From positions 16,740,001-16,804,000 of the forward strand of contig OZ059895.1 of assembly GCA_964057225.1 (NCBI GenBank): a stretch of 64,000 nucleotides of DNA, in the 5' to 3' direction. This DNA comes from Auanema rhodensis. Its lineage: Eukaryota; Animalia; Nematoda. A program made the translations under genes and the position numbers. Below, in pieces: positions 23,701 to 47,628 of this stretch (the stretch's first letter is position 1; each line of letters opens with the position of its first letter). The notes below the pieces were generated by a model. It was given only the letters and a program-made list of their open reading frames with translations. It had not been told where the DNA came from and searched no databases.

Positions 23701-26700
23701 TAGTTGATAAGTTCTTATTTTCCTTTAAATCTCTGGCGGCTGCTATTTGACGATGTTGAAACTCAATCTAATATATGAGATACAATATACCTGCTTATTG
23801 ATGCAAAATCCAATGATATTGAAATAATTATGGATGGTTTGCTTAGAAGTTCTGCAAAATGATTTTGGGCACACATGTGGATCTAGACAATCATTCGTTC
23901 AGTGAGATGCCTTCGGATTGTCAAGTTTCATGTGTGAAGCACTCACAGTAGTTTAACGTATTGGACTTCTTTCACATGTCAAAGTTGTCCCCTCTTTCTT
24001 AATCGTCTTTATAAAAATTCATAACGATCACGAAGATTTGTACTTGGATTCTCAAAAATCGGTCGAATTTTATTCTGTTTTGACACATTGAAAGATAAAG
24101 TTTCATAAGCGCTAACTGTAATTTGATTATTTGTTCTCTTAAGTTTGTTTTGAAACATTCTCAACTTCTCATACTAGTAATAAGCCTATAAGCTAGAGAT
24201 GAAGGTGACAGGCTTTTTTTTAACTTACTCTCTTTTGTTCTGTCTGTGTCTATCTTTTCTCCACTAGAAACAGCAGTCCAAGAGTAGGGGGAGGGCTCAT
24301 AGGAGGTTGGGGGCTGTCCGTCTATTTGAACACTACAGCATCACCGCCAGAGCAACACAGCTTGGGTCGCGGTCCTCCGCTGCTCAGCTGATTGTTTCCT
24401 GTCCATTGATTAAGCCAAAGAAGAAAAGAAATTGATTTCAAAAGAGTACTGCTTCACTAGTATTATTCATTTTATCTCCATTTATTTTATCTACCCTGTG
24501 TATTTCCTCGAGATTATGGAACACATGGATCCATCACCTTATGCTGTTTCAAAAATTTGTTTCCCAACTCTAGCTCTTCAAAAGACCTTGACCGGTCGCA
24601 ATATTGTGGCCCCTTCTAGATGTACTCATAGTGAAAATCATCGCAGCTATCTCAATCATAAAAAAGCAGCATCATTGAAAGAGAGACGAGTACGAGCTGC
24701 TGCTGCGGCTGAACGTCGTAGACTTGATGATGAGATGGTCAATGAAGGTGCGGCGGCTCGTTCTTCTGCATTAAGTGTTTCGTCCTCATCATCGTCTTCT
24801 AGCCATCTACACCAGGCCACTGTTAATTCCAATCGTCGAACGATCGTTCCACAGTACAGCTTTGATTCAGAGCTTGGAATGATGCCTCAACGGTCATCTT
24901 CTAGTTCATTTGATGCTCTATCAACTAGTTCCATCCTTCATATTCCCGTAGGCTCCCCGTCTTGTTCCAAGGACGAAGTTACATATTCTGAAATAATCGA
25001 CTACTATTCTCCGCTCGATAATACCTCTAATCTATATAATAATAATAATGAGAAAGAGCGAAATATAAATTTCAACATCCGTGTAGGCCATAGAGGCCGC
25101 CAGTCTGTAAAGTGTATCGGGAATATGGTAAGATTTCCTATTAATATATCTATAAAACTTTAGTTTTTCATTAACTTTTATTATTATTATTATTAATTGA
25201 CTCTATTGTACTTTATATTGTCCTTTCAGAGGCCTAAGGATAAGCCTCTTCATGAGTTCTATAATGATGACGACGCTGAACTTGAAGGTATGTTTTGTTT
25301 TTAATATTTTCACTTGATTAATCACTACGTTATGAATCCTTACAATCGTTGTTCCTGTTATTTGTCCTATTTTCTGGCTTTACTTTTGATGCAATTTAAA
25401 AGTTTTTGATATGTTAACGTTTTTGTTAAAAATCATTTCTATGGAAGAAATTCTACTTTTTATCTTTTCTATTGGAAATGAACCTTGAAGAAACAGCTGG
25501 TTCCTTGTCTTCTATCGAAGAGCGACTGACTTGCTGTCTTCGCTAGGGACTGAGGCTCGTAACTTGACCGACGAAACACATTTCTTAAATTCCTGAATGA
25601 TGATGACATGTTCTCGGCAGCTGTGGCCAGATTTTTGAAATCAGTTCAGTGTTCTTGACCTCAATCATTATGAAATTCTCATGTAATCAAAAAGGCATAG
25701 TATTTTTAAATTAGCTAACACGGGGACCTGTGGTTTACACTTTAGAATTAGGCACCGGTACACGATGTGAAGGATAGGAAGTAGTGAAATTATTAATTAC
25801 GTGAAGAACACGTGTCTTTCGTTTTATTAATCAAATTTGTTTCCAGCAATTGCAAAGATGACTGATCCATCGGCTCCACGACCTGAAGGAATGATTATGA
25901 CTCCTGTCAGAGGAGAAAGCGCAGCTGCCAGTAGTCAAACATTACCAAGAAGTATAGACAGGTTTGTTTTGATGAATGATGAATGATGATAGGCACCTCA
26001 AAACATAGTTCAAATACTGTTCCTATAGTATATTTCTTGTAATCGAAAGTTCTTTTTGTTTTGACGACTTAAGCATGAGGTACGAATAGAACAAAACCAG
26101 AAAGTGCGCCGATTTTTTGCTCTCGTATTGCATTGAAATCAAAATCCTATTGTTTTGATCTGGACTTCATCTAGTTTTTAACGCTTCCACATTCATTCTT
26201 TGTTCTGACCATATTTGCTTTGAGCTCTTCCGTATAGATTAATTTGTCCCTCCTGTCCATCAATGAATTAATTCTGTAAAGGATGACAAATCAAACAATT
26301 TCTTTCAGCGCTTTGCATCGTTTTGGGACAACATGTGCCAAAAACATTGTTGGAATGGTTTTGGATCAATCTGGGAGACCAACAGAGCAACTAACGTATG
26401 GAAAATTACTGAGCAGAGCCAATAAAATTGGATACATGCTCCTCAATAGAACTATTACAATTGGAAAAGATAATACTAAAGTTCCTATGTGCAAACCTGG
26501 GCATCGAGTTGCTTTGATCTATCCAAATACTGAACCCCTCGCTTTTTTGACTGCATTCTACGGGTGTCTGTTGGCCGGAGTTGTTCCTGTACCAATGGAA
26601 GTTCCTCTTACTAAAAGAGATGCGGGAATCCAACAACTTGGGTTTTTACTGGGCTCCTGTGGAGTCAAAGTAGCATTGACATCAGAAGCTTGTTATAAAG

Positions 26701-29700
26701 GCCTGCCTAAAACAGCCTCAACTCCATCTGCTCCATGCTCAACTCCATCTGGGTCCAACAGCTTGACCGGCCAAGGGCATGAAGTTGTTGACTTCAAGGG
26801 ATGGCCCCGACTATATTGGGTAACAACGGAGCACTTGGTAAGTCATCAATTTTTTCAAGTTTTTCTGAAAATTAGCTTTATAGAGTAAGCCGTCTCGTGA
26901 TTGGACAGCAACACCACGGGTCGCTGATGAGAGTGTCGCGTATGTTGAATATTCGACGGATAGGGACGGAGCTGTTAAGGGTGTCTGTGTTTCTCGTCAA
27001 TCCATGCTTGCACATTGTCGAGCAATCACAACAGCCATGGAGTATCAAGAAGGTATTTCCGAGTTTAACATTAAACGCGCAATCATTTACTAAACTTTCA
27101 GGTGACACTATGATGTGCGTAGTTGATTTTAAAAGAGAAGTTGGTTTGTGGCATGCTGTTCTAGCCAGTGTTTTCAATGGAATGCGAATAGTTTTTGTTC
27201 CATATTCCTTGATGAAAATCAATCCTGCTAGCTGGATGCTAACAGCCACCAAACTGAAAGGTAAATCTTTGTTTTCAAACTGTTTCCATATATTTGCATT
27301 TCAGCTACGATAGCTTTGGTTAAATCTAGAGATCTTCACTGGGGTTTACTGGCTACAAGAGACCATAAAGATGTGGATTTGTCCTCACTTAGATCTTTAG
27401 TTGTGGCTGATGGAGCCAATCCTTGGTCATTATCATCTTGTGATCAGTTTGCTGCTAAGTTTTCTGAGCATGGTCTACGTACAGATGCCATGTGTCCTTG
27501 TGCTGGAAGCAGTGAGACCGGTACCATTTCTTTAAGAAGGTATGTTATAGTATCTATTGTATATATCAATTTATCTATTTTTTGAAGAAGAACAACCGTC
27601 GGTGTTAGCAGCAGTGGGAGAGGAGTTTTATCTATGTCCGCATTGAGTCATTCTGTTGTTCGCGTTGATTCAGAAAATTCTTTAACTAGCCTTGTTCTAC
27701 AAGTATGATTTATCTTAGAATTTTCAACCTTACGCTTTTTTTCTTGTTTAGGATGCTGGTCAAGTTATTCCTGGAGGAGTTGTTGTTGTTGTAAAATTAC
27801 AAGGGTCTCCTCGTTTATGCCGAGCTGATGAGGTACGTTTGAAAATGACTTTGCATTTGTTTATTTTATATTATGCGGATTTACGAATATGTTTAGGTGG
27901 GAGAGATTTGTCTATTTGCACACTCTACTGGCCAAGCATATTGGGGTCTTGACGGAATGTCCGCTTCCACATTTCGGGTATGTTGGTTTATATTTATAAT
28001 TTGAAATCCTTTTGGCATTAACAATTTCCTTTCTAAACTATATGAATTATGCTTTAGGTTGAGCCATTGGGGACTGACGATCGTCCTCTAGGCCCTATGC
28101 ATTATGTTAGAAGTGGTTTAATAGGATTCATGGGACCAGATGGTCTTGTATTTGTTGTCGGTCGTCGAGCTTCTCAGCTTACCGTGTCAGGGCGGCAACA
28201 TTCTGCCGATGATATCATAGGTATATCGTCTTAACATAAGAAAAGCCATTCATTTTTTTAATTTTTCAGCAACTGTGTTAGCGGTAGAACCAATGAAATT
28301 TGTATATCGAGGTCGCATTGCGGTATTTTCCATTAATGTGCTACGCGATGAACGAATTGTCATTGTGGCAGAGCAAAAACCTGGAACATCTGAAGATGAT
28401 GCTTTTAATGTTAGTTTTTCTCCGTTTTCAAGGCTGATTGAAATATTTTAGTGGATGTCACGAGTTCTGCAAGCAACGGATACTATACATCAAGTCGGAA
28501 TATATTGCTTGGCACTTGTACCGGCTAACCAACTTCCCAAAACACCTTTAGGAGGAATTCATGTCTCTGAAACTAGGCAAAAATTCCAAAACGGCGATTT
28601 ACACCCCTGCAACCTGATGATGGCTCCCCACACTTGTGTTCTTAACCTGCCGAAACCTCGGTAATTTGATTCCTAGTCAACTATTTATATAATTCATGCT
28701 TTCTTTAGTGAACGACAATCTGATGTCGGACCAGCAGCTATATTTGTAGGGAATATTGTGCAAGGAGTACGCATAGCTGGTGCTCAAGGCAGAAGTTTAG
28801 GACCTGAAGAAGATGTGGTTAGTTATCTTCTTGAACGCCTGCCTTTAATTCTATTTTTTAGCCTTTCAATCTGATTGATGTTTTGAGATCTCGTGCAACT
28901 AGTGCTCCAGACCATCGTTTGTACACGTTGGTCACGAGTAAAAATCAAGATCAGGACTTTGTTACATGTGGAAGTCTTCTTAAGTAAGTTCAAGTCTTCT
29001 GTCATATGTTTTACATTATCTTTAGACGGGCTGAAAGAATTGCTGCTTTGTTGACGGATAGAGCTCGTCTCAACCCCGGAGACCATGTGGCGTTAATTTT
29101 CCCTCCTGGACTTGAATTGGTATCAGCATTTTATGGATGTTTAGCTGCAGGTAAATCAATATTCATTCTTATATGGAACAAAACTCTTAATAATTTTAGG
29201 AGTTGTTCCTGTATGTATTCGGCCTCCATCACCATCATCTCTTCAATCCACTTTACCGACTGTTAGGATGATTGTTGACGTCAGTAAATCAGTAGCCATT
29301 CTCTCCAATAACACAATTAGTAAATTATTGAAGGTAAAGCTTCAAATGAGTTTTGCAATCTTTATAATTATTCTAATTTAGAGTAAAGAAGCAGCTCATC
29401 GCGTAGATGCTAAAGCATGGCCAATGATTCTAGATATTGAAGACTCTCCATCTTCATGGAAGAGAAAAACTAATGTAGAACAACAAGAACCCCGCCCTTC
29501 GGATGTGTGCTATCTGGTTAGTTTTGGCTTTATTTCATACAAAAACTTTTTATAAACTAAATTTATTCATTGAGTATCACGTTTTGGTTCTGCTCATTCC
29601 TTCTTGTCGCTCTTTTTCTCCTAAAACATATAAGTCATATTTTGGCTAAAATGTTGTTATCCACATCAGTGGTTTCCTTCTTGGATCCAACGGAATCTTT

Positions 29701-31957
29701 CTTGCTAGCAGTATTTTTAGCTTCCTTCTTTGAAGCATTTCTGGCTGATTCTTCTTGAGTCTGAAAACCGTATTTTAAATTTCAGTCTCACTGTTTTGAT
29801 TTCTAACCATTTTAAGATCATCGTCCTTAGGGGCTTTTCCTTCTGCTTCCTTAGAATCGTTTTTGGGTTCTGGCTGGCCCTGAAAAGTGTCTTAAATTTA
29901 TTTTTTTTGATGTGTATTATATACCTCTGGATGTTGTGTCATAGGTACAGCGGTGGCAACATTATCAGTTGGCTGAGCATCTTTCTTTACGGGTTTAGTT
30001 CTTCATAATTGAGTAATTAATTATGAATTATAATTAAAACTTACTTTTTCTTGCCGCATTTAATAAGAATTAGGGAGATTATTATAAAGTTAATAAAAGC
30101 CAACAGAAGCATGACCAACACTTTTGTTGTTATTGAGAAAGAATGATTTTTTTTCAATTTAAATGATATCTACGTGTGACGTAACTCACGTTTTCTAATT
30201 TGACGTGTACACGCGTGTAGGTGCTCGGTGTGCAATGCTTAGCAAAACTAAAACTTTCACGCCTAAATATTCAAATTTTGTTTGCAAATGTAAACTTTGT
30301 TTTCAAGCGTGATATTTACAGGATTTTTCTGTTAGCACTACCGGACAACTTGCTGGCGTTGTAGTCAGTGTTGCTGGAGCTGCTGCGTTATGCAAAAGCT
30401 TAAAGGTATGAAAAAAGTTTTTTTCGTTAAATATAGTATACTATATTACAGGTTGCTTGTGAACTTTATCCATCTAGACATGTTGTTCTCTGTCTTGATC
30501 CATATTCTGGGCTTGGCTTCGCTTTATGGTGTTTATCAAGTGTTTCTTCTGGACATCATACGACACTTATACCTCCAGCAGAAGTAGAAAGTCAACCTTC
30601 TCTCTGGCTCTCCACCGTCTCTCAGGTCAAAGGTAATATTTTGATGTGATTGTAACTGTGCTTAACTGAGCTTCTAATTTAGCTCGCGATACTTTTACAA
30701 CAAATGCTATTATGGAGCTATGTATTCGTGATTTGGGTACTAGTGTTGCTCAACTCAAAGAGAAACAAGTCAATCTATCATGGTTTGAATATCATTTCTT
30801 GTTTTTATGAAATATATATTTTCAGCTTGAGAACATGTGTTGTTGTTGCCGAAGATAGACCAAGAACATCTCTTGTTGCTGCATTCTCTCGAATTTTCGC
30901 ACCTCTAGGACTTTCACCAAGAGCTGTATCTACATCCTTTGGTTGCCGAGTGAATCCTGCTATTTGTATGCAGGTACAAAAGTTCTCCCATCACTCACTT
31001 ACTTTATAAATGTATTTAAGGGAGCTTCGGGGCCAGATCCAGCCACTGTTTACATCGATGCTCGTGCTCTGAGAAATGACCGTGTTACTCTTGTTGGTAA
31101 AGGAGCTCCTCATAGTTTATCATTATTAGAGAGTGGAAAGGTATTCTATTCTTTCATTTATGTTATTTCGATTTTCTTGATTTTTAGATCATGCCTGGTG
31201 TCAAAATCGTAATTGCCAATCCTGAAACTCGTGGGCAATGTGCAGATTCTCATCTCGGAGAAATCTGGGTTGCTTCTTCTCACAGTTCTGTTAACTATTT
31301 CACTGTGTATGGTGAAGAAACCAATATGCATAACGATCACTTTAATGCTCGTCTGACAACGGGCGATACAAGAACAAGATATGCTCGTACTGGCTATTTG
31401 GGTTTCTTGCGACAGACGCAATCTATTACTGAAGGTATTCAAATACGTAGAGTTGCTCTTATAAATTTTTAATTCTTTAGATGGCGAATTACATGATGCC
31501 GTTTTTGTTGTTGGTGCATTAGAAGAGACGTTGATGTTAAGAGGCATGAGATACCATCCTGTTGATATAGAAAATTCTGTTTCTCGCTGCCATAAATTAG
31601 TTGGGGAATGGTAATGAAATTTCCGTATTTAGTAATTATTTCATGAAATCCCTTTTGTAGTGCCGTATTCACTTGGACACATTTGGTGGTTGTTGTAGCC
31701 GAATGTACGGGCAATGAATCAGAAGCTTTGGATATGGTTCCAGCCATTACTTCTGCGGTAAGTTGTTTCATCTTTGAACTATTGAACCAAAATCTCTACA
31801 GGTTTTGGAAGAACATCATTTAATTGTTGGTGTTGTTGTGATAGTTGATCCAAGAACAATTCCAATTAACACAAAAGGAGAGAAACAGCGTAATCAGCTT
31901 CGGGAGCACTTCCTTCATGATCAGCTGAATCCCATCTACGTTGCCTATAACAGCTAA
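17751..31957 (+). CDS. dip-2: Disco-interacting protein 2 (DMAP1-binding domain + tandem adenylate-forming/FACL-like domains)
   Basis: N-terminus MEGIDISKLPLDVRERLAELDLELSEGDITQKGYDKKK. Internal motifs RDEGRFHSEIRAEAVQAAL, KVSLKIQQVLTNLQRPK, AFYGCLLAGVVPV, DFKREVGLWHAVL, LPKTPLGGIH, STSFGCRVN and YARTGYLGF. C-terminus QLNPIYVAYNS*. Confidence 0.95.
19411..19458 (+). CDS. Candidate 48-nt symmetric cassette exon of dip-2 (GSQRLLKPQFSEEDGC)
   Basis: ttttaatag acceptor and G|gtagat donor, phase 1-1 like the flanking exons, open frame. Confidence 0.4.
21624..21741 (+). CDS. Candidate alternative first coding exon of dip-2 (MLSHDVAPVLRPN...AMRHSAY)
   Basis: ATG ~14 nt after a ttctag acceptor, consensus gtaagt donor, phase 1 matching the downstream SSSDEDDD exon (~21930). 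Confidence 0.55.
24516..25127 (+). CDS. Candidate large alternative first exon of dip-2 (204 codons, MEHMDPSPYAV...CIGNM)
   Basis: 612-nt open frame in AT-rich intronic DNA ending at ATG|gtaaga (phase 0). It splices in frame to the RPKDKPLHEFY exon at 25230. A GC-rich promoter-like patch lies at ~24270-24400. Confidence 0.7.
29594..30112 (-). CDS. Nested antisense gene in dip-2 intron 29517-30321: ~112 aa protein with an N-terminal hydrophobic anchor and Lys/Glu-rich tail
   Basis: Five exons separated by short (~44-47 nt) GT-AG introns give MLLLAFINFIIISLILIKCGKKKTKPVKKDAQPTDNVATAVPMTQHPEGQPEPKNDSKEAEGKAPKDDDLKMTQEESARNASKKEAKNTASKKDSVGSKKETTDEKKSDKKE*. The last donor is weak. Confidence 0.8.
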
Positions 31958-33683
31958 TTTAATATATATGAGTAGGATTTTCCTTCTTGCTTTTCTTGTG
32001 ATTACGGGTTATAAATCGTCGGTTCAAGAAGTATGCCCTGTTCTTGTGCTCTACAGATTTGGAAAAGCACGTCCCGTTTTAGGCATACGAATGATCATTT
32101 GTTTTCATGTTTATTCTTCATATTTTTTTATTTGTGATCTCCTTTTTGTATTCAGTCGTACGGCTCATCAGGGTGTTATATTGTTTTGATCATGCCTCGG
32201 GAACATGTTAACTTAAATTTAGCTAGTTATGTCACTTAAATTATATATTTGCGATTCTATTCCCTTGTCAATATTGCCCATTTTATAGTTTTCATGATTA
32301 TACCTGTGTTATTAGCTGTAACACACCCTCACACAGCCTCAGGCTTGTAGGTGTTTCCATTTTAGACTACTAATCATATGTTTCTGTTTCCATAGACGAG
32401 TTGCTATCTGTGAGATGTATTTTGATTTCATATTTAAGTATTTTAGATTGTAGTCTCTGAAGATTTTTTATATTGGATATGTGTGTCCCCTTTCTTTATC
32501 TTCTTGTGATCCGTTTGCCCGCTTCCCGGACGACCTATGAGTCTGTATGACTGACACAGAAGGTCTATCAGGAATCGTATTCCAGCCCGTTCAAGGGATC
32601 ATTTTTAACACATAAAGCATATATCTTTATGATGTACATAGATATATAATAACGTAATAAAAATTCAAGCATATCTTTGATTTATCGAGATCATGGTAAA
32701 ATCACTTAGGGATTTCTCAAATGATTTAATAGTTAGTGTGCAACAGTGGTATTCTCTTCAATTTCTCATGCTTCTCTATAGATGGAAGTACAGGATCCAG
32801 ATACAAAGGTGAAGAAGATGACGCGGATGACGTGCACGCTGACAACGCAGATGATTCTGGTGAGTGGTACTGATGCTATAACCTGTCGATGGTTGGGGGG
32901 AAAGAAATAACGATGAAGGCGGACCGCTGAAAGATGGCAACCTTCTAGTTTATGATTAGGCGACAAATAGTATATAAAGAAAGAGAGACATGATAAATGA
33001 TACGCTGATAGGGATAGAGCAGGTTCCCTCTCTCTTTTCATTGGGGACTGAAAGTCAGTCATACAGTGACGACAACGAAGTTGGAAACGACGTCTAAGAA
33101 TAAGAAGATGATGTGACCCTGCCAGACTACAGCGAGAGATTACAGAAGCAGAGAATAGAGCGTGAGCGGTTAAAATGAGAAGATGTGAGCGATGACTTTA
33201 GGAGAGGAGGTGAAGCAAATAGGCTAACTGATAAAATATATGCGATGAAGAAATAGAGAGTGAGAGAAAGGGAGATATAAGAAGTGTGGACTTGTAACAG
33301 ATGAAGAGAGAGCAAGAGAGAAAGAGAGAGAGAGAGCAAGAGAGAGAGAGGGGGAGAGGACAACAAGAGGGGCCAAGACAATTGACAGTATGAAGACATT
33401 GATGACATGACCAAAAGACGTCCTTATCATCTTCATTGTTGTTTTTGGTAGTCACAATCGATAGCAGCACAGAATCTGGCGCATCTTGTAATAATCAAAG
33501 TCGCAAAACTTTTTGTTTTCGGATCACGAACGGTGTTAGATGTTGCTGCTATGCTGCTATGCTGTTTGTCTGCGTATACAACGACCTCAAGCTTGAGTCT
33601 CATGTCAACTAATGCTGATAATGATGCTGATGCGTGTATGTACATATGTATATATGTATCGTTATCACCATTACCGTTGTTAT

Positions 33684-39050: not shown

Positions 39051-41214
39051 TATCTTCATCTCTCTCTCTTTCTCTCTCTCTCTCTATCTTTAACCGAGGT
39101 TAAAATTTATTTATTTATAAGAAATAATTAATTATAATTATTTTTATATTTAATTATCTATATTCATTCTTTTTTTTTTTCTGTTTAGTTTTTTAGTTTT
39201 TTTATTTTATTATTTTGTTCTTTCCTTCTTTATATTTTCAATTATTTTCTGTTAATCTGCTTCACATACTATGATTTTGCCATAAGCATGAGTTAAGCTT
39301 TAAGCTTGAGCATTAGCAACATGAAGCAAAATAGACAGAAAGTAAAGAGCAATCTTTCTTTATTATATATTTTTAAAAAGTTTTTTTATAATTATTAAAC
39401 GAAATATTTATAAATATATAATTATATTTTTTATTTTTTTATTTCAAATAATTATATTCCTTATTCCATATAGATGATGCCGAATTGGGCTTTTATGCTC
39501 GTTGGAAAAATCGGAATCGAGTACGGCCAGCGAAGTTTGATGTGATTGAGGCTCGTATGGTAAGTCTAATTCCATTCTGGATGATCTTATACTTGTAACT
39601 TTACCCCAAGTTTTCTTCTTTTTCTTTTCAAATAATTAGTATAACCCATTTCTTTTTCTATATTCGACTTCTACCTCTATATATCTCTTATGACCCTCTA
39701 TAACGTCGTCAAAGCTTTTCTGTTCTTCTCCAAATTGCTTTTCCTCTTACCGCCATGCCCCCCCCCCCCACTCCTCCCCAATAGCTCTCTATCACTAATG
39801 TTTGTCTGAAATTTAATTTTTGTTCCTTTTCCTGCTTTCTTTTCTCATTTCTGTCAACTATCATTTGATTTCACTAATCATTTAAGGCTGTTGGAAGTTC
39901 GTTTGTAGAACATCACTTAACGATTGAACAACTACGAGATGTCTATCCTGATTCATATATTCAACATGAATATCCGGAACAAAGTGATGGTTTACATTCA
40001 GAAGAAGCCAAGTAACACATCATGTTCTGAAAATAGCTTCATCATCCTTTTCTGTATTTTCAGAAATCGATTACGTGATGGTGGAGCTAATGTTATTGAT
40101 CCACCCAAAGAGCCCGGCTTATTTCAGATGTTTTTACAACAATTTCATTATAAATTTTGGTTATTACTAACAGGTTAACCATATATCTAGCATATATAGT
40201 TAGTTACACAAGCTATTGCTCATTCAGGTGCTGCATTCTTATCCATAGCTACATATTGTGTTCATCGTGTTCACGGATACAATGAACCACTTAATCTCTA
40301 CTGTGCTTTCATACTGATGATCGTCGTGCTATTCATGTGTTGCCTCTCATTCTGGCAAGAAAGTAAAGCTAAAAAAGTTGGTTAATTCATTAACTATGTG
40401 TATATATTGTAATTCATAATCCATACTATATATAGGTTATCCAAAATTTCACTAAACTATTGCCATCTAAAGCTGTTGTCATACGTGATTGCGAAGAAAA
40501 AGAAGTTGATATCGAAACATTGGTCGTTGGCGATCTGGTTGTAATACGGTAAAGATCACATTTTCATCTTTTTTTTCTTCTTTTTCGTCTTCTAAAAAAA
40601 ACTTTTTGTGGCCTTATCAAACTTATAAAGATGATATTGAATGAAAGATCAAGAAGATGTATTACCCGATTTCAGATCAGGTTCTCGTATTCCAGCTGAT
40701 TTGCGAATTTTGCATACAAACTGTCTTACAATTGAAGTTGGCGAGGTAACAGGTGATTCATTTACTTTCCTATTTATCATATAATTATAAAATTATTTTA
40801 TTTATTTATTGATTGATTTATGCTAATAATTATTGATTTATTAATGTTTTTTTTATTTATTTTGAATATAGGACTTAATGAGCTAGTTGAATGTTCATCC
40901 GAAGCTGCAGCTCCTCATGTCTCTGTATTTGATGCCAAAAATGTTGCCTTCAAAGGATCTCATTGTACAGAAGGAGATGGCATTGGAATTGTTATTCGAA
41001 CAGGAAAATTTACTGTAAGTTTAGATATCTATTTCCTTTTGAAGTCATTAAAATAACTTTTTATTAGATTTTTTTTTGTTCTTTATCATTTTCCGTAAAA
41101 TATAAAAATCACGAGAATCTACGTGAGTATGTAGACAATCATGTATACACGTGTTATCAGGTTTATGACAATGATACATTTCAAATAAAAATAATATTAT
41201 TATATATAATAAAT

Positions 41215-41251
<37 letters not shown>

Positions 41252-41669
41252 TTATATATATACTCATCTCTCATGTAGCCGGGCCGGAATACCCAGAAGC
41301 TTTTGAGATTTTTCCAGGGCCAGAAAAACTGGACCTATTTTCCGAATATTCCGGTCTTGAATATATTGTAAAAATAGTGAATTTTATTTACTAAAATGAT
41401 GTCATATTCATAGCTTGCTTATCGGGAAATTATCCAATTTGTTCCAATATATTATGAAATTATGGAATAGCCAGCCCATTTCTGATCATAGTAGGTCCGA
41501 AATTACTTTGTTTCAGAATTTTTTGAATATTCACCAGTTTTGATACATAAATATCTTTTATATATTTATATATATCTTGCCTTATTTTTGCTAAAATTAC
41601 ATTTCTCTCCAACATGTTCCACACGCAAACTGATTTTTTGATATTTCTTGTTGCATTCTCTCATGTGGA

Positions 41670-41768
<99 letters not shown>

Positions 41769-44700
41769 TACAACCATCAACCGCTCATCATGAAGTTTAC
41801 ACTTAAAATATAAATTTTAATAATAATTTAGTAATAGTTCTTGAGAAACTACCATAAAAATTATTTTGTTTGCTATTTTCTTCTTTGTAATGTGAAATGA
41901 AGAAAGAAAAATGAACTTAATGAGTACTTTTCTTTAAGAATGAAGATGATCAATTTTCCATGAATCAATAATTATTTATGAAAAATTTAAATGATTAGTT
42001 AAAGAAAAATGAAAATATTTAAATGTAAAATTAGCAAAAAATATAATAATTATATAAACTATGTGGAATATATAGTTAATATATTCTAGGTACTCGGTGG
42101 AATAGCTAATATACATCAACATATTCCTCCTCCTACTGGAAAACTTCAACGTGAACTTAGAGCATTTGCAAATTTCATTACAATCTTAGCTATAAGTATG
42201 GCAGCTGGAATATTTCTAATCGGATGTATTGTGGCTCGTTTTGAGAATATTTTGGATCATTTTGTTGTTGGATTTTTAGTTATTATTGTTGCTAATGTGC
42301 CACAAGGTATAATGACTATTCATTCAACAACACATATCTAACTATGCTATAGGATTACCGGCTACCGTTATGTCTCAGTTAAGAATTATCGCAAGACGAA
42401 TGGCTCAAAAGAATATTCTTATCAAAAAACTTGAGCTTATCGGTAAGAGCAGCTTGCTGTCGTCCTCATGACATCATCATCATATGTACTTGCTTACCTA
42501 TTATAGATGAGCTAGGAGCTGCTACCGTCATTTGTGCTGATAAATCCGGCACTTTAACAATGAATCAGATGGTAGTCTCCGATATTTGGTTCAACAACAG
42601 GCTGGTCAGTGGTCGGTTTTTTTAATTTTTTTCATTCTTTTCTATATATTGCTTTTACTATATCATATACAAATTTGCTCTGTTAGATATAACAGCAGCA
42701 ATGGCATCTGATAGAAATGCTACATTCAAGTGTTTTGTAGGTTCAAGCGTCGATTTGAAACATCCACATCTTCGAGCAATGAGAAATTCCATGGCTAAAG
42801 GTAGTGAACGTTTTGAAGATCCTCTACCGGATATACTAACTGGTATGTGTATATCAACGTTAACTATTATTATATATTATAACATTTATAGTTATGTCTG
42901 TATGTAATCGAGCTCAATTCGAAAATGTTCGACGAAGTGCACGACGTGTTTCCACGATGAGAGCTCTTCAGAAGACTGTCAGCGAAGCTATGCTTAGTGG
43001 TCCACTGAAAAAGAAATTCACAGTTGTGTATGTTTCTCAACTACGTAAAACATGTATTGCATGTTCTTTTTTGTGGTTTCAGTGATACGCGAACTGGACA
43101 AGTTTCTGAACCTAGACGAGTAACATTGAATTCTGATGCAGCTTCAATCAGTTCAAATCTAGAAGAAGAAGTATTAAGAAAGATGTCAACTCGTATGTTG
43201 TCTAGCGTACAAGCATATAGTTATCAGAAATCGTTTCAGATATATCGGAAGGGCTACCCAAACAAGCGAACGATTGTCATAAGAAAAACGAAATATTTGG
43301 TGTACCAAGTGATGTTGCATTAGTTAAATACGTTGAGCGTAATGCTTCTGTGGAAGCTATTCGTCAGCGTTATCATGTATGTTTTTTTACTAATTATATG
43401 CATATAACATATAATTATATTTAGACAGTTTTTGAAATACCTTTCAACTCAATAAGGCGATGGCAGCTGGTTGTCACCAGATGTTTGGCTGAACCTAGTA
43501 ATGAGAAAGATCTTCCTAAGCTCGGCAAGGTTTGGTTCTAAACCCAGTAAATCATATATGCTTATATAACTTGAAGGATGAATGTCGTTATGTTGTCATG
43601 ATGAAAGGAGCACCAGAAGTTATCATCAACCGGTGTGATCGTTATAGACTGAATAATGAAGTTATTCCAATTGACAGCAATTTCAAGCAAGAATGCCAGG
43701 TTTGTTTGAGCGTTTGAAGCATTTTTCAAGTTTATGATTATGATTAGTAGCATTATATATGCTTAAGGCTGCATGGGAATCATTGGGTCATCAAGGAAGA
43801 CGGGTCATAGCATTTGCTCAATGTTTCTTCAAAGGAAAATCATCAATGAAATTTGGCAATGAAGGTGGTTGGCCAGAAAAGCTAGTTTTTCTGGGAATGG
43901 CAGCTATCATGGATCCACCAAGGTAATACTCATCGAAGTGACGTAATGCGATTTCTATTCAACTTTATTCATACAGACCTGAGACATTCAATGCTATACA
44001 ACAGTGTAAACAAGCAGGAATCAAAGTCTTCATGATCACAGGAGATCATCCGACTACAGCAAATGCTTTAGCTACACAGATTGGACTGATCGAACAAGAA
44101 CCAAAGGTAATTTATATAATTATAATTAAAAAAGTAAACAAAATCAGTTATTCGCACATATTCATTCAAAATTCAAACAATATCTTCTGAGATGGGAGAC
44201 TCATCGCATACTTTACACATCAGCTGTGAATTGCTGTAAGCCATCATGATACACTGAGCACTTGAAGCTTGGTGATTCGACAATCTTCAATATTAAACTT
44301 AGCTTAAGAAACTGGTTTGTATCATTCAAAACTTACACGATAGACACCGCTGCTTCTCTCGATGTATAAGCTGTAGAAGGAATATTCGTGAGCATATATC
44401 TCCAGCATCAGTAATACAACAATGACAATACTGAGAATCTGTAGAGAATTATAATCCAAATGTACAGAAGCTAGCTAGAATCTTTCTCACCTCGATGCCA
44501 ATCCATTCAGTTGGATATGCAGGTTCGATATTTGTGTGCATCCAGTTGCTCAGCCATGTTGATCGATGAAGAAACATTGACACCGTCGTTGTAGCCCAGA
44601 AGATGATGTGCACCACATTGCTTATAGCAACTTGAACCTATAACATTCCATATATCATATAAGATTACATGATATTCAAATATACGCGAGTTAAATCCGT

Positions 44701-47628
44701 GTAAGACACATATATCTGGTACATATTAATAAATGCAAATATGATGGACATTGTTAAGAAGAAGATTGGCAACATAAGTGAACGGCTCATGCTATGCATT
44801 TCCATAGTGCCATATCCAAAGATATCAGCTGCATACATCTAGAAGTTAATTACGATATAACATGTCGAACATCTATAACACGAATACCACCACACACATG
44901 TGACTGCTGATACTATGGAATGTCAGATGAGTTGATATTGTGCCATTTTCATTAGCAGCCTATATACACACAAATTCAAATCCAATCGAATTGACATTAA
45001 GACTTTGTACCTGTTCAATAATTTGTTTCACATCTGAATCTGTTGCTTCTGTTGTTGTTAAGTTTGATGTAGTTGCTGGTTGAGAACTTGATAGTAAATC
45101 TGAGGCATAGTCTTCTGTTGGTTTTTCCGTTGAGTAATCTGTTTCATTCATCTTCAAATCATCAACATAGTCATCGTCGAGTGGTAAATCAACAACCTAA
45201 ATATATAATTAATTTATATATATATATATATATAATATAGTAATAGTATACCTGAGTATCGATATCTGTTTCACGCTTAAGTCGTTCATTAATAGCTTCC
45301 TAAAGCAATATACTAGAAGTAATCAAATCTTAAACACTAAAGATGATTTAAGGAGGTTGTACTGACCATGTCATCAACATCAGTTGTTAACGAACTGTTC
45401 GAATCATCTTTATCCTGAACATGATCATATTACTATGTGATCGGATATAGTTAATTAAATCTTACTTCTACGCTTAAAAATATTTCGATTGCATCATCAA
45501 ACTATAAATAATAATAATAATAATAATATAATTATAATAATTTACCTTTTGTTCGACACATAACTGACGATTAGTAGTTAATAAAAAAATTGAAACAGAT
45601 GCAAGCAATACTAAGGCTAATCGTTGAAGAAAATAGACACGCATCTAATGAAAAAAATAAATATTTTAAGAAGAAAATATATATTTAAAATGAAATGAAT
45701 AATTAATTTAAAAAACTTGAAGCTTATAAAAAACTTACCACCAAGTAATTTTGTATGGAGAATTTAAAATGAAATGACGCTCACGTATTGCCGTGGGTGT
45801 TATGGTAATATGCTAATGAGATGTATGCTATACGATAGGACCACCTCCATTGATTGGTTGATAAGTTCAAATAGAATGATAAATTGATAAATAGAAACTA
45901 ATTGATGATGATATTTCATAATTAAAAGGTGTTTATATTGTATTTTGATTGTATTATAGACATCATCGGTAACATTATTTTCAAATCGAAAACAGTATAT
46001 GCCGGAAAGAGATTGGGCTCTTACAACTGGAGAACAGCTACAGAATTATGGACAGGAAGATTGGGATAGCTTACTTCGACACAAGTACATCGTATTTGCT
46101 AGGTAATACGATTTATTATCTTTAGCAATAGAGAAATATCTTAAATTGCTATTTCATTCGAATGAATTGAATAAGTGCCAACAGAGTATTTTCGCAAATT
46201 CGATTTGGAAGTTATATATATAACTTCAGATTATAATGTTGTTTTTGTACTTTATGCGGTCATTATAGAACAAATCCTGATCAAAAGCTTTTGATTGTTC
46301 AAGAAGTTCGAAGACGAGGAGAGACTGTTGCGGTAACTGGTGGTGGAGTTAATGATGCTCCAGCTTTGGCTCATGCCAACGTTGGAATTGCTATGGGATT
46401 GAGCGGTATGAATTTTTTTGCTCAAAACATAAGCATTTTTTTGAATTTGAGCTTAAATATCGTATTTATTCCATTTAGGTAGTGATGTTGCCAAGCAGAC
46501 AGCTGATATTGTCTTACTTGATGACAACTTTGCATCCATTGTCATGGGCATTGAAGAAGGACGTCTGATGTTTGATAACTTAAGGCTCGAATATCATTAC
46601 GATTAGTTTAATGTATTCTTTCAATATTTCAGATTATCATTAGCTTATACATTTGCACATTTATGGCCTGAGGTTGTGCCAATCATATTATCATTCACGC
46701 TTGGTCTACCTCATGCTCTATCTCCACTTCAAGTAAACTCATTATATTATAAAACTATTAAGATTTATAAACATATTTCAGATTCTCTCAATTGATTTAG
46801 CCTCTGAAATGCCTCCAGCTGTATCTCTTGCTTATGAGCAGCCAGAGCAGGACATAATGCATACGAAACCACGAAGTAGAGCTTCACGATTACTTTCCAA
46901 AGGTCTGCTCATGTATTCGTATGTATTTGCTGGAACCGGAATCACTATTGGCTGTATTATCTCATATCTAAGTGTATACTGGTACGTCATATCATGATGA
47001 CGTTCTTCTATAAAATCGTTTTGTCTTGTAGGTATCATGATATATCTTTTCAAGATATTCTCTTTACTCAAGAGCATCATTGGAAGATCGGTGCTGCTAA
47101 CTTCACTACAGGCAAGGGTGTTGTATTGGATGAGCAGCAACAACTTTTCATCAAAGGACAAGCTGCAGCTGCTTGGCAGATTTGTTTAGTTATGTCACAG
47201 GTATGTTATTGCTTGGTTTTTTTTTTTTTTTTTGAAAAAAAATAACAAAATACCATTTAAACTGTCAAATCAAATTTCTATTTGTTCATTTATAGGTATT
47301 CCATTTATATAATTGCACAACAAGACGTGTATCAGTTTTTCGACATGGAATAACGAATGTTGTTAGTGTGCTTGCTGTTATTCTTGAGGTAAATTCAATA
47401 GTTATAACTATACTTATTATAATTTAAATTCAATTGAAGATACTCTTGTTAATAATGTTCGTCTATACACCTATCTTCCAATACGTCATGGATATACATA
47501 CTCCACCTATACATGTCTGGGCATTTGCTCCTATTGTTGGCTTATATCTGCTAACAATAAATGAAACTCGAAAATTTCTTGTACGAAATCATTCGAAAAA
47601 CAAATTCGTGAAACTTGTCAAATGGTAA
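38513..47628 (+). CDS. catp-1: Divergent type IIC-like (Na/K, H/K family) P-type ATPase alpha subunit, CATP-1-like
   Basis: Motifs [104 protein letters not shown] and [16 protein letters not shown]; ends VKLVKW*. The 5' exons (MTFE|[14 protein letters not shown]|[11 protein letters not shown]) are inferred from splice phase and are less certain. The family call is secure; the catp-1 orthology is probable. Confidence 0.8.
38986..39085. repeat. (CT)n microsatellite in ATPase intron
   Basis: Long CT run. Confidence 0.9.
41674..41768. repeat. (GA)n microsatellite with periodic GAAA interruptions in ATPase intron
   Basis: ~95 nt purine run. Confidence 0.9.
44213..45644 (-). CDS. Nested antisense gene in ATPase intron 44107-45959: ~320 aa predicted four-TM membrane glycoprotein
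   Basis: Ten coding exons joined by ~45-55 nt GT-AG introns with no stops: [33 protein letters not shown]|[12 protein letters not shown]|[16 protein letters not shown]|[16 protein letters not shown]|VVDLPL...KQIIEQ|AANENGT...MCVV|MYAAD...[31 protein letters not shown]|[23 protein letters not shown]...[10 protein letters not shown]|[15 protein letters not shown]...GVYR|[24 protein letters not shown] probable 5'UTR exon ends at a gtaagt donor near 45738. Confidence 0.85.

What the first reader, a model, noticed from the sequence alone, without database searches (positions are those of the whole stretch)
40730..46830. P-type ATPase with multiple catalytic and ion-site substitutions: a probable pseudo-pump
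Seen after splicing: the A-domain dephosphorylation loop TGES is TGLN, M4 PEGL is PQGL, DKTGT is DKSGT (Asp kept), the Mg-binding TGDGVND is TGGGVND, M5 TSNIPE is AHLWPE, M6 DLGTD is DLASE, and the KETYY-type C-terminus is absent. KGAPE, DPPR and TGDH remain and the frame is intact across many exons, so it is not a decayed pseudogene. Known: the TGES Glu, M4 Glu and GDG Asp are needed for turnover and cation binding in Na,K-ATPase and SERCA, and C. elegans CATP-1 was reported to act independently of pump activity. Inferred: a nucleotide-binding scaffold or sensor built on a pump fold.
Basis: partly seen in the sequence, partly recalled or inferred. Interest (0 to 1): 0.75.

Follow-up and report, generated by a model that had tools for sequence, protein, structure and literature searches.

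The report
Roundworm CATP-1: a crippled ion pump
This is the roundworm gene catp-1, a relative of the sodium-potassium pump that has kept its ATP and ion pockets across nematodes but lost two residues needed for normal pumping; the gene is already known, but its "pump" label deserves doubt.

Summary
The gene is larger than stated: at least 26 exons, about 39474-47628 on the + strand. It is intact and lies in a nematode genome. It is not an orphan pseudo-pump. It is 60-70% identical to CATP-1 orthologs and carries all 11 CATP-1 signature residues.

Half of the "substitutions" are not decay. PQGL, AHLWPE, DLASE and the ...KW end are the ancestral signature of a subfamily that includes catalytically intact nematode paralogs and oomycete pumps.

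Two losses are specific to CATP-1:
- The Mg-binding Asp of TGDGVND is never Asp in any of the 25 aligned CATP-1 orthologs.
- The TGES Glu is lost only in clade V (Rhabditina) nematodes.

Every other catalytic and nucleotide-binding residue, and the cation pocket, is invariant. The best reading is therefore a conserved ATPase that turns over slowly or acts as a switch. It is neither a bulk 3Na/2K pump nor an inert scaffold.

This is a new member of a known kind. dN/dS, a fold and a tree of the joined protein were not done. The scan has not reported this before on other DNA.

The parts
39474..39559 (+). Earliest coding exon found (...[29 protein letters not shown]). The first (ATG) exon upstream was not found.
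   Evidence: tblastn of ortholog N-termini, E=1e-7 to P0160. Donor ATG|GTAAGT read. No MT[LI]K-type start found upstream.
39887..40011 (+). Exon: [41 protein letters not shown] (N-terminal region)
40064..40173 (+). Exon: Cation_ATPase_N, leading into M1
   Evidence: Pfam PF00690, E=4.7e-5
40228..40376 (+). Exon: M1-M2
40436..40548 (+). Exon: start of the A domain
   Evidence: PF00122, E=2.2e-5
40676..40752 (+). Exon ending ...IEVGEVT-G. It holds the T and G of the TGES position.
40872..41014 (+). Exon starting (G)LNELVECSS... Leu replaces the TGES Glu, giving TGLN.
   Evidence: Orthologs are collinear (EVTG|IELP, EISG|SHDS).
42090..42306 (+). Exon: M3-M4, ending IIVANVPQ-G. It follows a 1075-bp intron that carries a (GA)n repeat.
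   Evidence: P0001
42353..42442 (+). Exon: (G)[29 protein letters not shown]
   Evidence: P0001 is spliced across both flanking introns
42507..42611 (+). Exon: [20 protein letters not shown]. Phosphorylation motif DKSGT, Asp kept.
42687..43376 (+). Four N-domain exons (42687-42842, 42892-43027, 43083-43192, 43240-43376). They include the long CATP-1-type insert. The 43240 acceptor could instead be 43228.
43425..43529 (+). Exon: [15 protein letters not shown] (F475 kept, K480->R)
43577..43699 (+). Exon: [12 protein letters not shown] (KGAPE). Its acceptor is weak (TTGAAG).
   Evidence: PF13246, E=2.9e-5
43768..43922 (+). Exon: ...GRRVIAF...[10 protein letters not shown](R) (R544, DPPR)
43977..44106 (+). 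Exon: ...[15 protein letters not shown] (TGDH)
45960..46102 (+). Exon: ...[11 protein letters not shown]...HKYIVFA(R). The acceptor is uncertain (45960 or 45996, both in frame). It follows an intron of about 1.85 kb that is said to hold an antisense gene.
46269..46405 (+). Exon: TNPDQK...[24 protein letters not shown]. Gly replaces the Mg-binding Asp.
   Evidence: PF00702; P0003
46479..46584 (+). Exon: [34 protein letters not shown](R), ending at a GC donor (AAG|GCTCGA)
   Evidence: Sequence read. The [12 protein letters not shown] junction is confirmed by P0003, P0004 and P0152.
46633..46732 (+). Exon: M5, [19 protein letters not shown]
46782..46981 (+). Exon: M6-M7, [22 protein letters not shown]...
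   Evidence: PF00689, E=8.9e-11; PDB hits to ATP12A and Na,K-ATPase alpha
47032..47200 (+). Exon: M7-M8 loop and M8 (no SYGQ motif; ...VMSQ)
47296..47388 (+). Exon: [15 protein letters not shown]... (His at the D926 position)
47440..47628 (+). Last exon: M10, C-terminus ...NKFVKLVKW, and the stop codon

Best explanation
The gene is the ortholog of C. elegans catp-1 in a clade V (Rhabditina) nematode. CATP-1 is a nematode-specific offshoot of a P2C-like subfamily (nematode CATP-1/2/3 plus oomycete and algal-type pumps). That subfamily's ion pocket differs from the Na,K-ATPase pocket from the start: Gln in M4, His-Leu in M5, Glu for D808 and His for D926.

Shown: on the CATP-1 stem the Mg-binding Asp of TGDGVND became Gly. 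In Rhabditina the catalytic Glu of TGES was then lost as well. Every other residue of the phosphorylation site, the nucleotide pocket and the cation pocket stayed invariant or nearly so.

Inferred: the protein still binds ATP and cations and probably still uses Asp369. It cannot run the fast Post-Albers cycle, because phosphoryl transfer lacks its Mg ligand and E2P hydrolysis lacks its general base. It therefore most likely acts as a very slow ATPase or a long-lived conformational or phospho-switch that regulates other membrane processes. That fits the pump-independent role reported for C. elegans CATP-1. It is probably not a bulk 3Na/2K pump. The canonical pump of this genome is a separate gene on contig C1.
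For: Identity:
- Word search with the Pristionchus ortholog returns 'catp-1 [P. pacificus]' and the C. elegans chrI protein.
- Summed over 24 exon fragments, the window is 70% identical to Diploscapter CATP-1 and 62-66% to Caenorhabditis CATP-1. It is 43-48% identical to catp-2/3-type proteins and 38-40% to oomycete pumps.
- All 11 CATP-1-versus-paralog signature sites are shared.
- The CATP-1 clade has SH-aLRT 100.

Losses:
- The D710 position is G in 23 of 25 aligned CATP-1 orthologs, Q or S in the other two, and never D. It is D in 14 of 14 paralogs.
- The E214 position is E in 14 of 14 paralogs and E in 10 of 14 clade III/IV CATP-1 proteins. It is never E in the 11 Rhabditina orthologs or the window; across the Rhabditina rows plus the window it takes eight different residues (S, I, Q, H, T, Y, D, L).

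Constraint:
- D369, K370, T373, T375, F475, K501, R544, D586, T610, D612, R685, K691 and D714 are invariant or nearly so in CATP-1. So are Q327, H775, E779, D804 and E808.
- Terminal branch lengths are similar to those of intact paralogs.

Genome context: a canonical eat-6-like gene with TGES, PEGL, DKTGT, TGDGVND, TSNIPE, DLGTD and ETYY lies at C1.

Literature: a pump-independent CATP-1 function (Ruaud and Bessereau 2007) is cited in PMC11631496.
Against: - No biochemistry exists for any CATP-1 protein.
- The TGE Glu is kept in clade III/IV CATP-1 long after D710G. The whole catalytic site is also conserved. Both suggest that a phosphoenzyme cycle can survive D710G, so real (if odd) pumping is not excluded.
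- In C. elegans the D409E knock-in has strong phenotypes, and its authors read them as loss of pump activity (PMC11631496).
- The effects of mutating D710 and E214 are recalled from the Na,K-ATPase and SERCA mutagenesis literature. They were not tested here.
- dN/dS could not be computed because no ortholog DNA was available.
Confidence: 0.6

Rival explanations
1. CATP-1 is still a working, coupled cation pump with unusual chemistry. Mg2+ would be held by D369, the T/S371 carbonyl and water or N713/D714. Another group would stand in for the TGES Glu. It would transport a different ion set (for example K+ or H+/K+) from the Na,K-ATPase.
For: - The catalytic and ion-pocket residues are invariant in CATP-1.
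- TGE is retained in 10 of 14 clade III/IV orthologs after D710G.
- Caenorhabditis and Mesorhabditis have GGGVDD, a new Asp three residues on.
- The D409E phenotype and the glial pump claims are cited in PMC11631496.
Against: - No compensating acidic gain is shared across the orthogroup.
- The window has GGGVND, without the extra Asp.
- The E214 position is occupied by eight different residues in Rhabditina, as expected for a site that is no longer used.
- From memory of the literature, D703/D710 and E183/E214 mutants of SERCA and Na,K-ATPase lose phosphorylation or dephosphorylation.
Confidence: 0.25
2. CATP-1 is a pure scaffold or pseudo-enzyme. It would use the pump fold only as a platform, perhaps binding nucleotide, with no phosphorylation and no ion binding.
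For: The TGES Glu and the GDGVND Asp are lost. A pump-independent function is reported for C. elegans CATP-1 (cited).
Against: D369, K370, T373, K691 and D714, and the M4/M5/M6/M8 pocket residues, are invariant in the 11 Rhabditina CATP-1 orthologs and near-invariant across clades III-IV. A scaffold would not need them. D409E is not silent in C. elegans.
Confidence: 0.1
3. The gene is a decaying duplicate (young pseudogene), or the motifs are an artefact of a wrong gene model.
For: There are several non-canonical motifs. One intron needs a GC donor. One acceptor is weak (43577) and the first exon was not found.
Against: - At least 26 exons have open frames.
- About 985 residues align at 60-70% identity with orthologs from other genera.
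- The same motifs are present in those orthologs.
- Spliced fragments P0001 and P0003 confirm the junctions, including the GC-AG one.
- No alternative motif-bearing exon exists.
Confidence: 0.03

Closest known systems
C. elegans CATP-1 (Y105E8A.12; chrI; P0177) and its nematode orthologs
   Same: - Same orthogroup: 62% identity to C. elegans and 70% to Diploscapter.
- Shared motifs: PQGL, DKSGT, TGGGV(N/D)D, AHLWPE and DLASE.
- The TGES Glu is lost.
- The long N-domain insert and the ...KW end are present in the orthologs; P0177 itself, the shorter C. elegans b isoform, ends ...PVGFQ.
   Different: - The residue at the E214 position differs: Leu here, His in C. elegans.
- C. elegans has GGGVDD, with an extra Asp; the window has GGGVND.
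- The window's first exon is unresolved.
C. elegans chrV CATP-2/3-type proteins (P0018, P0153), the Plectus paralogs and the oomycete Na,K-ATPase-like pumps (P0234, P0236, P0255)
   Same: They share the same subfamily ion-pocket signature: PQGL, (T/A)H(L/M)WPE, a DLxx(E/D) M6 and His at D926. Their C-terminus ends in ...KW or ...AW.
   Different: They keep TGE(S/A/P), DKTGT, TGDGVND and K480, so they look catalytically intact. Identity to the window is only 38-48%. This genome has no copy of that type.
Na,K-ATPase and H,K-ATPase alpha subunits (EAT-6/ATP1A, ATP4A, ATP12A)
   Same: They are the closest solved structures: ATP12A 7x23 and Na,K-ATPase 2zxe/3wgu, E about 1e-170 for the ortholog P0152 and E=5e-9 for the window's M6-M7 exon. 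They share the 10-TM P2C architecture and the Pfam domains.
   Different: The window protein lacks E214, E327, D710, S775, N776, D808 and D926, the SYGQ beta-contact motif and the KETYY tail. The true EAT-6-like gene of this genome is elsewhere (L001).

Membership tests
P-type ATPase superfamily | DKTGT motif with the phosphorylated Asp | tested here: met
   [10 protein letters not shown] at 42509-42610. Asp, Lys, Gly and Thr are kept; the Thr at D+2 is Ser.
P-type ATPase superfamily | A-domain TGES loop with the catalytic Glu | tested here: not met
   The motif is TG|LN across the 40752/40872 junction. No alternative exon exists.
P-type ATPase superfamily | GDGxND hinge motif with the Mg-binding first Asp | tested here: not met
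   [10 protein letters not shown] (46270-46404). N713 and D714 are kept.
P-type ATPase superfamily | Nucleotide-domain and P-domain motifs KGAPE, DPPR, TGD and the conserved Lys of (S/T)PxQK | tested here: met
   MMKGAPE, MDPPR, ITGDHP and RTNPDQK
P2C (Na,K/H,K-ATPase alpha-like) architecture | Cation_ATPase_N, E1-E2_ATPase, Cation_ATPase, Hydrolase and Cation_ATPase_C domains; closest solved structures are P2C alpha chains | tested here: met
   Exon-wise Pfam hits: three are over the curated cut-off, and E1-E2_ATPase and Hydrolase fall below it on single exons. PDB hits.
Canonical Na,K-ATPase alpha (EAT-6/ATP1A) | Ion-site residues E327, S775, N776, D804, D808 and D926, and the C-terminal (K/R)ETYY | tested here: not met
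   The window has Q, H, L, D, E and H, and ends ...VKLVKW. The canonical gene is at C1.
CATP-1 orthogroup (nematodes) | Clade-specific signature residues against the paralogs (11 sites, including D710G, K480R, ALK->ALA and NLRK(T)->NLRLS) | tested here: met
   11 of 11 are shared by the window exons.
CATP-1 orthogroup (nematodes) | Higher identity to CATP-1 orthologs than to any paralog clade | tested here: met
   49-70% to CATP-1 orthologs against at most 48% to paralogs, over about 980 aligned residues
CATP-1 orthogroup (nematodes) | Placement of the window protein inside the CATP-1 clade of a tree | not tested
   The clade itself has SH-aLRT 100. The window's exons were not joined, so it has no row in the tree.

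The most novel reading that the evidence does not exclude
The whole CATP-1 orthogroup is a natural P-type ATPase turned into a switch. It would still be phosphorylated slowly on Asp369 without the Mg-ligand Asp. In Rhabditina, which lack the TGES Glu, it would then stay trapped in a long-lived E2P-like state. Its conserved, non-Na,K cation pocket would let it act as a cation- or ATP-gated regulator of epidermal and glial membrane processes rather than as a transporter. That would also mean the current description of C. elegans CATP-1 as a 3Na/2K pump is wrong.
Probability: 0.25. Interest if true: 0.65.

Novelty: new member of a known kind. Interest (0 to 1): 0.4.

Why it matters
The gene itself is an ordinary ortholog of a named C. 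elegans gene. The comparison still has value for people who work on catp-1. A recent paper describes CATP-1 as exporting 3 Na+ and importing 2 K+ per cycle (PMC11631496). The sequence data here say otherwise:
- The Na-site residues are absent from the whole subfamily.
- The Mg-binding Asp is absent from every CATP-1 ortholog examined.
- The dephosphorylation Glu is absent from all Rhabditina, C. elegans included.

This offers a sequence-based reason for the conflicting genetic results, which have been read as pump-independent in some studies and pump-dependent in others. It also makes the question testable with simple phosphoenzyme and ATPase assays. Finally, it warns against reading subfamily signature residues (PQGL, AHLWPE, DLASE, ...KW) as decay.

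Tried and rejected
- **Exon searches against PDB and the word index.** The M3-M4 exon gave no PDB hit. In the word search it gave only one 89-aa fragment, because exon-sized queries cannot reach full-length proteins. The single big search was therefore spent on the M6-M7 exon.
- **Diplogastrid origin.** The M6-M7 exon's best hits were Pristionchus, so I first took the species for a diplogastrid. Identity summed over all exons rejects that: Diploscapter, Logan160 and Caenorhabditis are closer.
- **Ortholog DNA.** No dN/dS could be computed and the origin of P0001-P0003 could not be checked.
- **Alternative exons** that would restore TGES, PEGL or GDGVND: none found.
- **A GT donor for the M5 intron.** Rejected in favour of a GC donor, because the GT option deletes the conserved MFDNLR.
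- **First exon.** Not found.
- **A compensating acidic residue shared by CATP-1 orthologs.** None found.
- **Literature.** The 2007 CATP-1 paper and the 2020 glia paper are not held. I therefore could not check whether the missing residues were already noted there.
- Exons were used one by one by reference, and orthologs (P0004, P0152, P0166 and others) served as proxies.
- **Structure prediction.** None was run.
Full report
**What is there.** The window comes from a nematode. The 22-nt SL1 spliced-leader sequence occurs about 3450 times in the 181-Mb assembly. The region is AT-rich, with introns mostly of 46-130 bp.

A multi-exon gene on the + strand runs from at least 39474 to the stop at 47626-47628. 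I derived the exon model from open frames and splice sites. I then checked it exon by exon with tblastn of two Pristionchus orthologs.

Two fragments from a closer relative are spliced exactly as predicted:
- P0001 spans the two introns between [13 protein letters not shown] and [10 protein letters not shown].
- P0003 spans TGGGVND through AHLWPE and DLASE. This stretch includes the junction FDNLR|LSLAYTF, which in the window needs a GC-AG intron (46585-46632).

| Canonical motif | In the window |
|---|---|
| TGES | TG\|LN |
| PEGL | PQ\|GL |
| DKTGT | DKSGT |
| TGDGVND | TGGGVND |
| TSNIPE | AHLWPE |
| DLGTD | DLASE |
| KETYY end | ...VKLVKW |
| KGAPE, DPPR, TGDH | present |

No other stretch in any + frame of 39-48 kb encodes TGE(S), PEGL, DKTG or GDGxND, so alternative splicing cannot restore them. 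Exon-wise Pfam hits cover Cation_ATPase_N, E1-E2_ATPase, Cation_ATPase, Hydrolase and Cation_ATPase_C. The M6-M7 exon hits ATP12A and Na,K-ATPase alpha chains in the PDB.

**Identity.**
- The exon-sized word search gave only one fragment. I therefore spent the one big search on the M6-M7 exon. It returned nematode proteins first.
- The cluster look-up named them: Pristionchus, C. elegans chrV, Bursaphelenchus and others.
- A word search with the full-length Pristionchus hit returned 'catp-1 [Pristionchus pacificus]', the C. elegans chromosome I protein, and orthologs from clades III, IV and V.
- I added the window's 24 full-codon exon fragments one by one to an alignment of 39 proteins. Summed identity is 70% to Diploscapter CATP-1, 69% to a Logan sequence, 62-66% to Caenorhabditis and 58-61% to Pristionchus. 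It is 49-60% to clade III/IV orthologs, 43-48% to catp-2/3-type paralogs and 38-40% to oomycete pumps.
- Eleven alignment columns separate CATP-1 orthologs from all paralogs. The window has the CATP-1 residue at all eleven.
- In a maximum-likelihood tree the CATP-1 clade has SH-aLRT 100 and a long stem of 0.67.
- The window's own genome holds only one other P2C-type gene, on contig C1. That gene carries every canonical motif: TGES, VPEGL, DKTGT, KGAPE, DPPR, TGDH, TGDGVND, YTLTSNIPE, DLGTD, SYGQEW and ...RETYY. The genome has one beta-subunit gene.

The first group is a subfamily signature, not decay. It comprises Gln for E327, His-Leu for S775-N776, Glu for D808, His for D926 and a ...KW end. 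These are shared by the C. elegans chrV proteins, the Plectus paralogs and the oomycete pumps. All of those keep TGE(S/A/P), DKTGT and TGDGVND.

The second group is specific to CATP-1:
- The first Asp of GDGVND is Gly in 23 of 25 aligned orthologs, Gln or Ser in the other two, and never Asp. A wider regex scan of all fetched proteins gave D 100, G 35, Q 4, S 2 and E 1.
- K480 is Arg in all CATP-1 orthologs.
- The TGES Glu has a different history. It is kept in 10 of 14 clade III/IV CATP-1 proteins. It is absent from all Rhabditina orthologs, where the position holds S, I, Q, H, T, Y or D, and L in the window. That pattern indicates a site that is no longer used.

Everything else in the catalytic machinery is invariant or nearly so in CATP-1: D369, K370, G372, T373, T375, F475, K501, R544, D586, T610, D612, R685, K691 and D714. 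So are the pocket residues Q327, Y771, T772, H775, E779 and D804, and E808.

**Mechanism.** From the Na,K-ATPase and SERCA mutagenesis literature (recalled, not tested here):
- The first Asp of GDGVND ligates the Mg2+ used in phosphoryl transfer.
- The TGES Glu activates the water that hydrolyses E2P.

Losing both should slow or stop the Post-Albers cycle. Yet the tight conservation of the rest of the site and of the cation pocket argues that ATP binding, Asp369 chemistry and cation binding are still selected. So does the long retention of TGE in clades III and IV after the Asp-to-Gly change.

My best reading (about 0.6) is a slow-cycling or switch-like ATPase with a non-Na,K cation pocket. 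It is neither a bulk pump nor an inert scaffold. An atypical but real pump remains possible (about 0.25). A pure scaffold (about 0.1) and a pseudogene or model artefact (about 0.03) are unlikely.

**Literature.** A 2024 paper treats CATP-1 as a 3Na/2K pump. It reports that a D409E knock-in suppresses nekl molting defects strongly and DMPP toxicity only weakly, while null alleles behave differently. It also cites the 2007 report of pump-independent function (PMC11631496). Its text does not mention TGES. The 2007 and 2020 papers are not held, so I cannot say whether the missing residues were noted before.

**Limits.**
- The first exon was not found.
- Two acceptors are ambiguous but in frame: 43228/43240 and 45960/45996.
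No search, fold or tree used a spliced window protein. No structure was predicted.

**Verdict.** This is a new member of a known kind, the catp-1 orthogroup. It has moderate interest, because the orthogroup-wide loss of two catalytic residues conflicts with how the C. elegans gene is currently described.

Noticed in passing
window 44213-45644, - strand (inside the 44107-45959 intron): Another first-stage note (s1-378920) reports a ten-exon four-TM gene antisense in this 1.85-kb intron. I saw only short minus-strand ORFs there and did not test it.
   Followed up: no
G000:C3:6741531-6766485 and C3:14134320 onward (outside the window): The SL1 spliced-leader 22-mer occurs about 3450 times (2592 forward, 859 reverse). 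It lies in long tandem arrays with 252-bp and 341-bp units, far more than the roughly 100 copies I recall for C. elegans.
   Followed up: no
window 46585-46632: A GC-AG intron (AAG|GCTCGA ... TTTCAG|A) separates the FDNL(R) exon from the M5 exon. The junction is confirmed by the spliced relatives P0003, P0004 and P0152.
   Followed up: yes
window 41600-41810 (inside the 41015-42089 intron): A long (GA)n / (TC)n microsatellite gives false RERERE/LSLSLS open frames on both strands.
   Followed up: no
proteins P0023, P0027, P0034, P0060, P0157 (other nematodes): A second, fast-evolving nematode clade of P2C-like proteins has even more degenerate sites: EKTG in place of DKTG in P0023 and P0060, S/N-G-D/E in place of TGE, and GDG(V/L/S)(M/L/A)D. 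P0015 of Bursaphelenchus has NRTGI. This genome has no member of that clade.
   Followed up: partly
proteins P0158/P0004/P0159 versus P0179/P0152 (Pristionchus): Pristionchus carries two catp-1 co-orthologs, A and B. B sits on a long branch (0.76). The window's genome has a single copy.
   Followed up: partly
proteins P0187, P0188, P0214, P0215, P0225, P0184, P0206: At the Asp710 position, filarial CATP-1 orthologs have Gln, Aphelenchoides has Ser and Thelazia has Glu. The Thelazia residue may be a return to an acidic residue.
   Followed up: no
window 24432-33000, + strand: Long open exons resemble DIP2 (disco-interacting protein 2, with an AMP-binding-like domain). I recognised this by eye from the translations only.
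   Followed up: no
same genome, other pieces (s1-384080, s1-391343): Earlier notes report an ABCG5/G8-like pair and an ABCA-like gene with dead ATPase sites in this same genome. Together with CATP-1, this suggests that transporters without working motors recur in this nematode. I did not check those notes.
   Followed up: no
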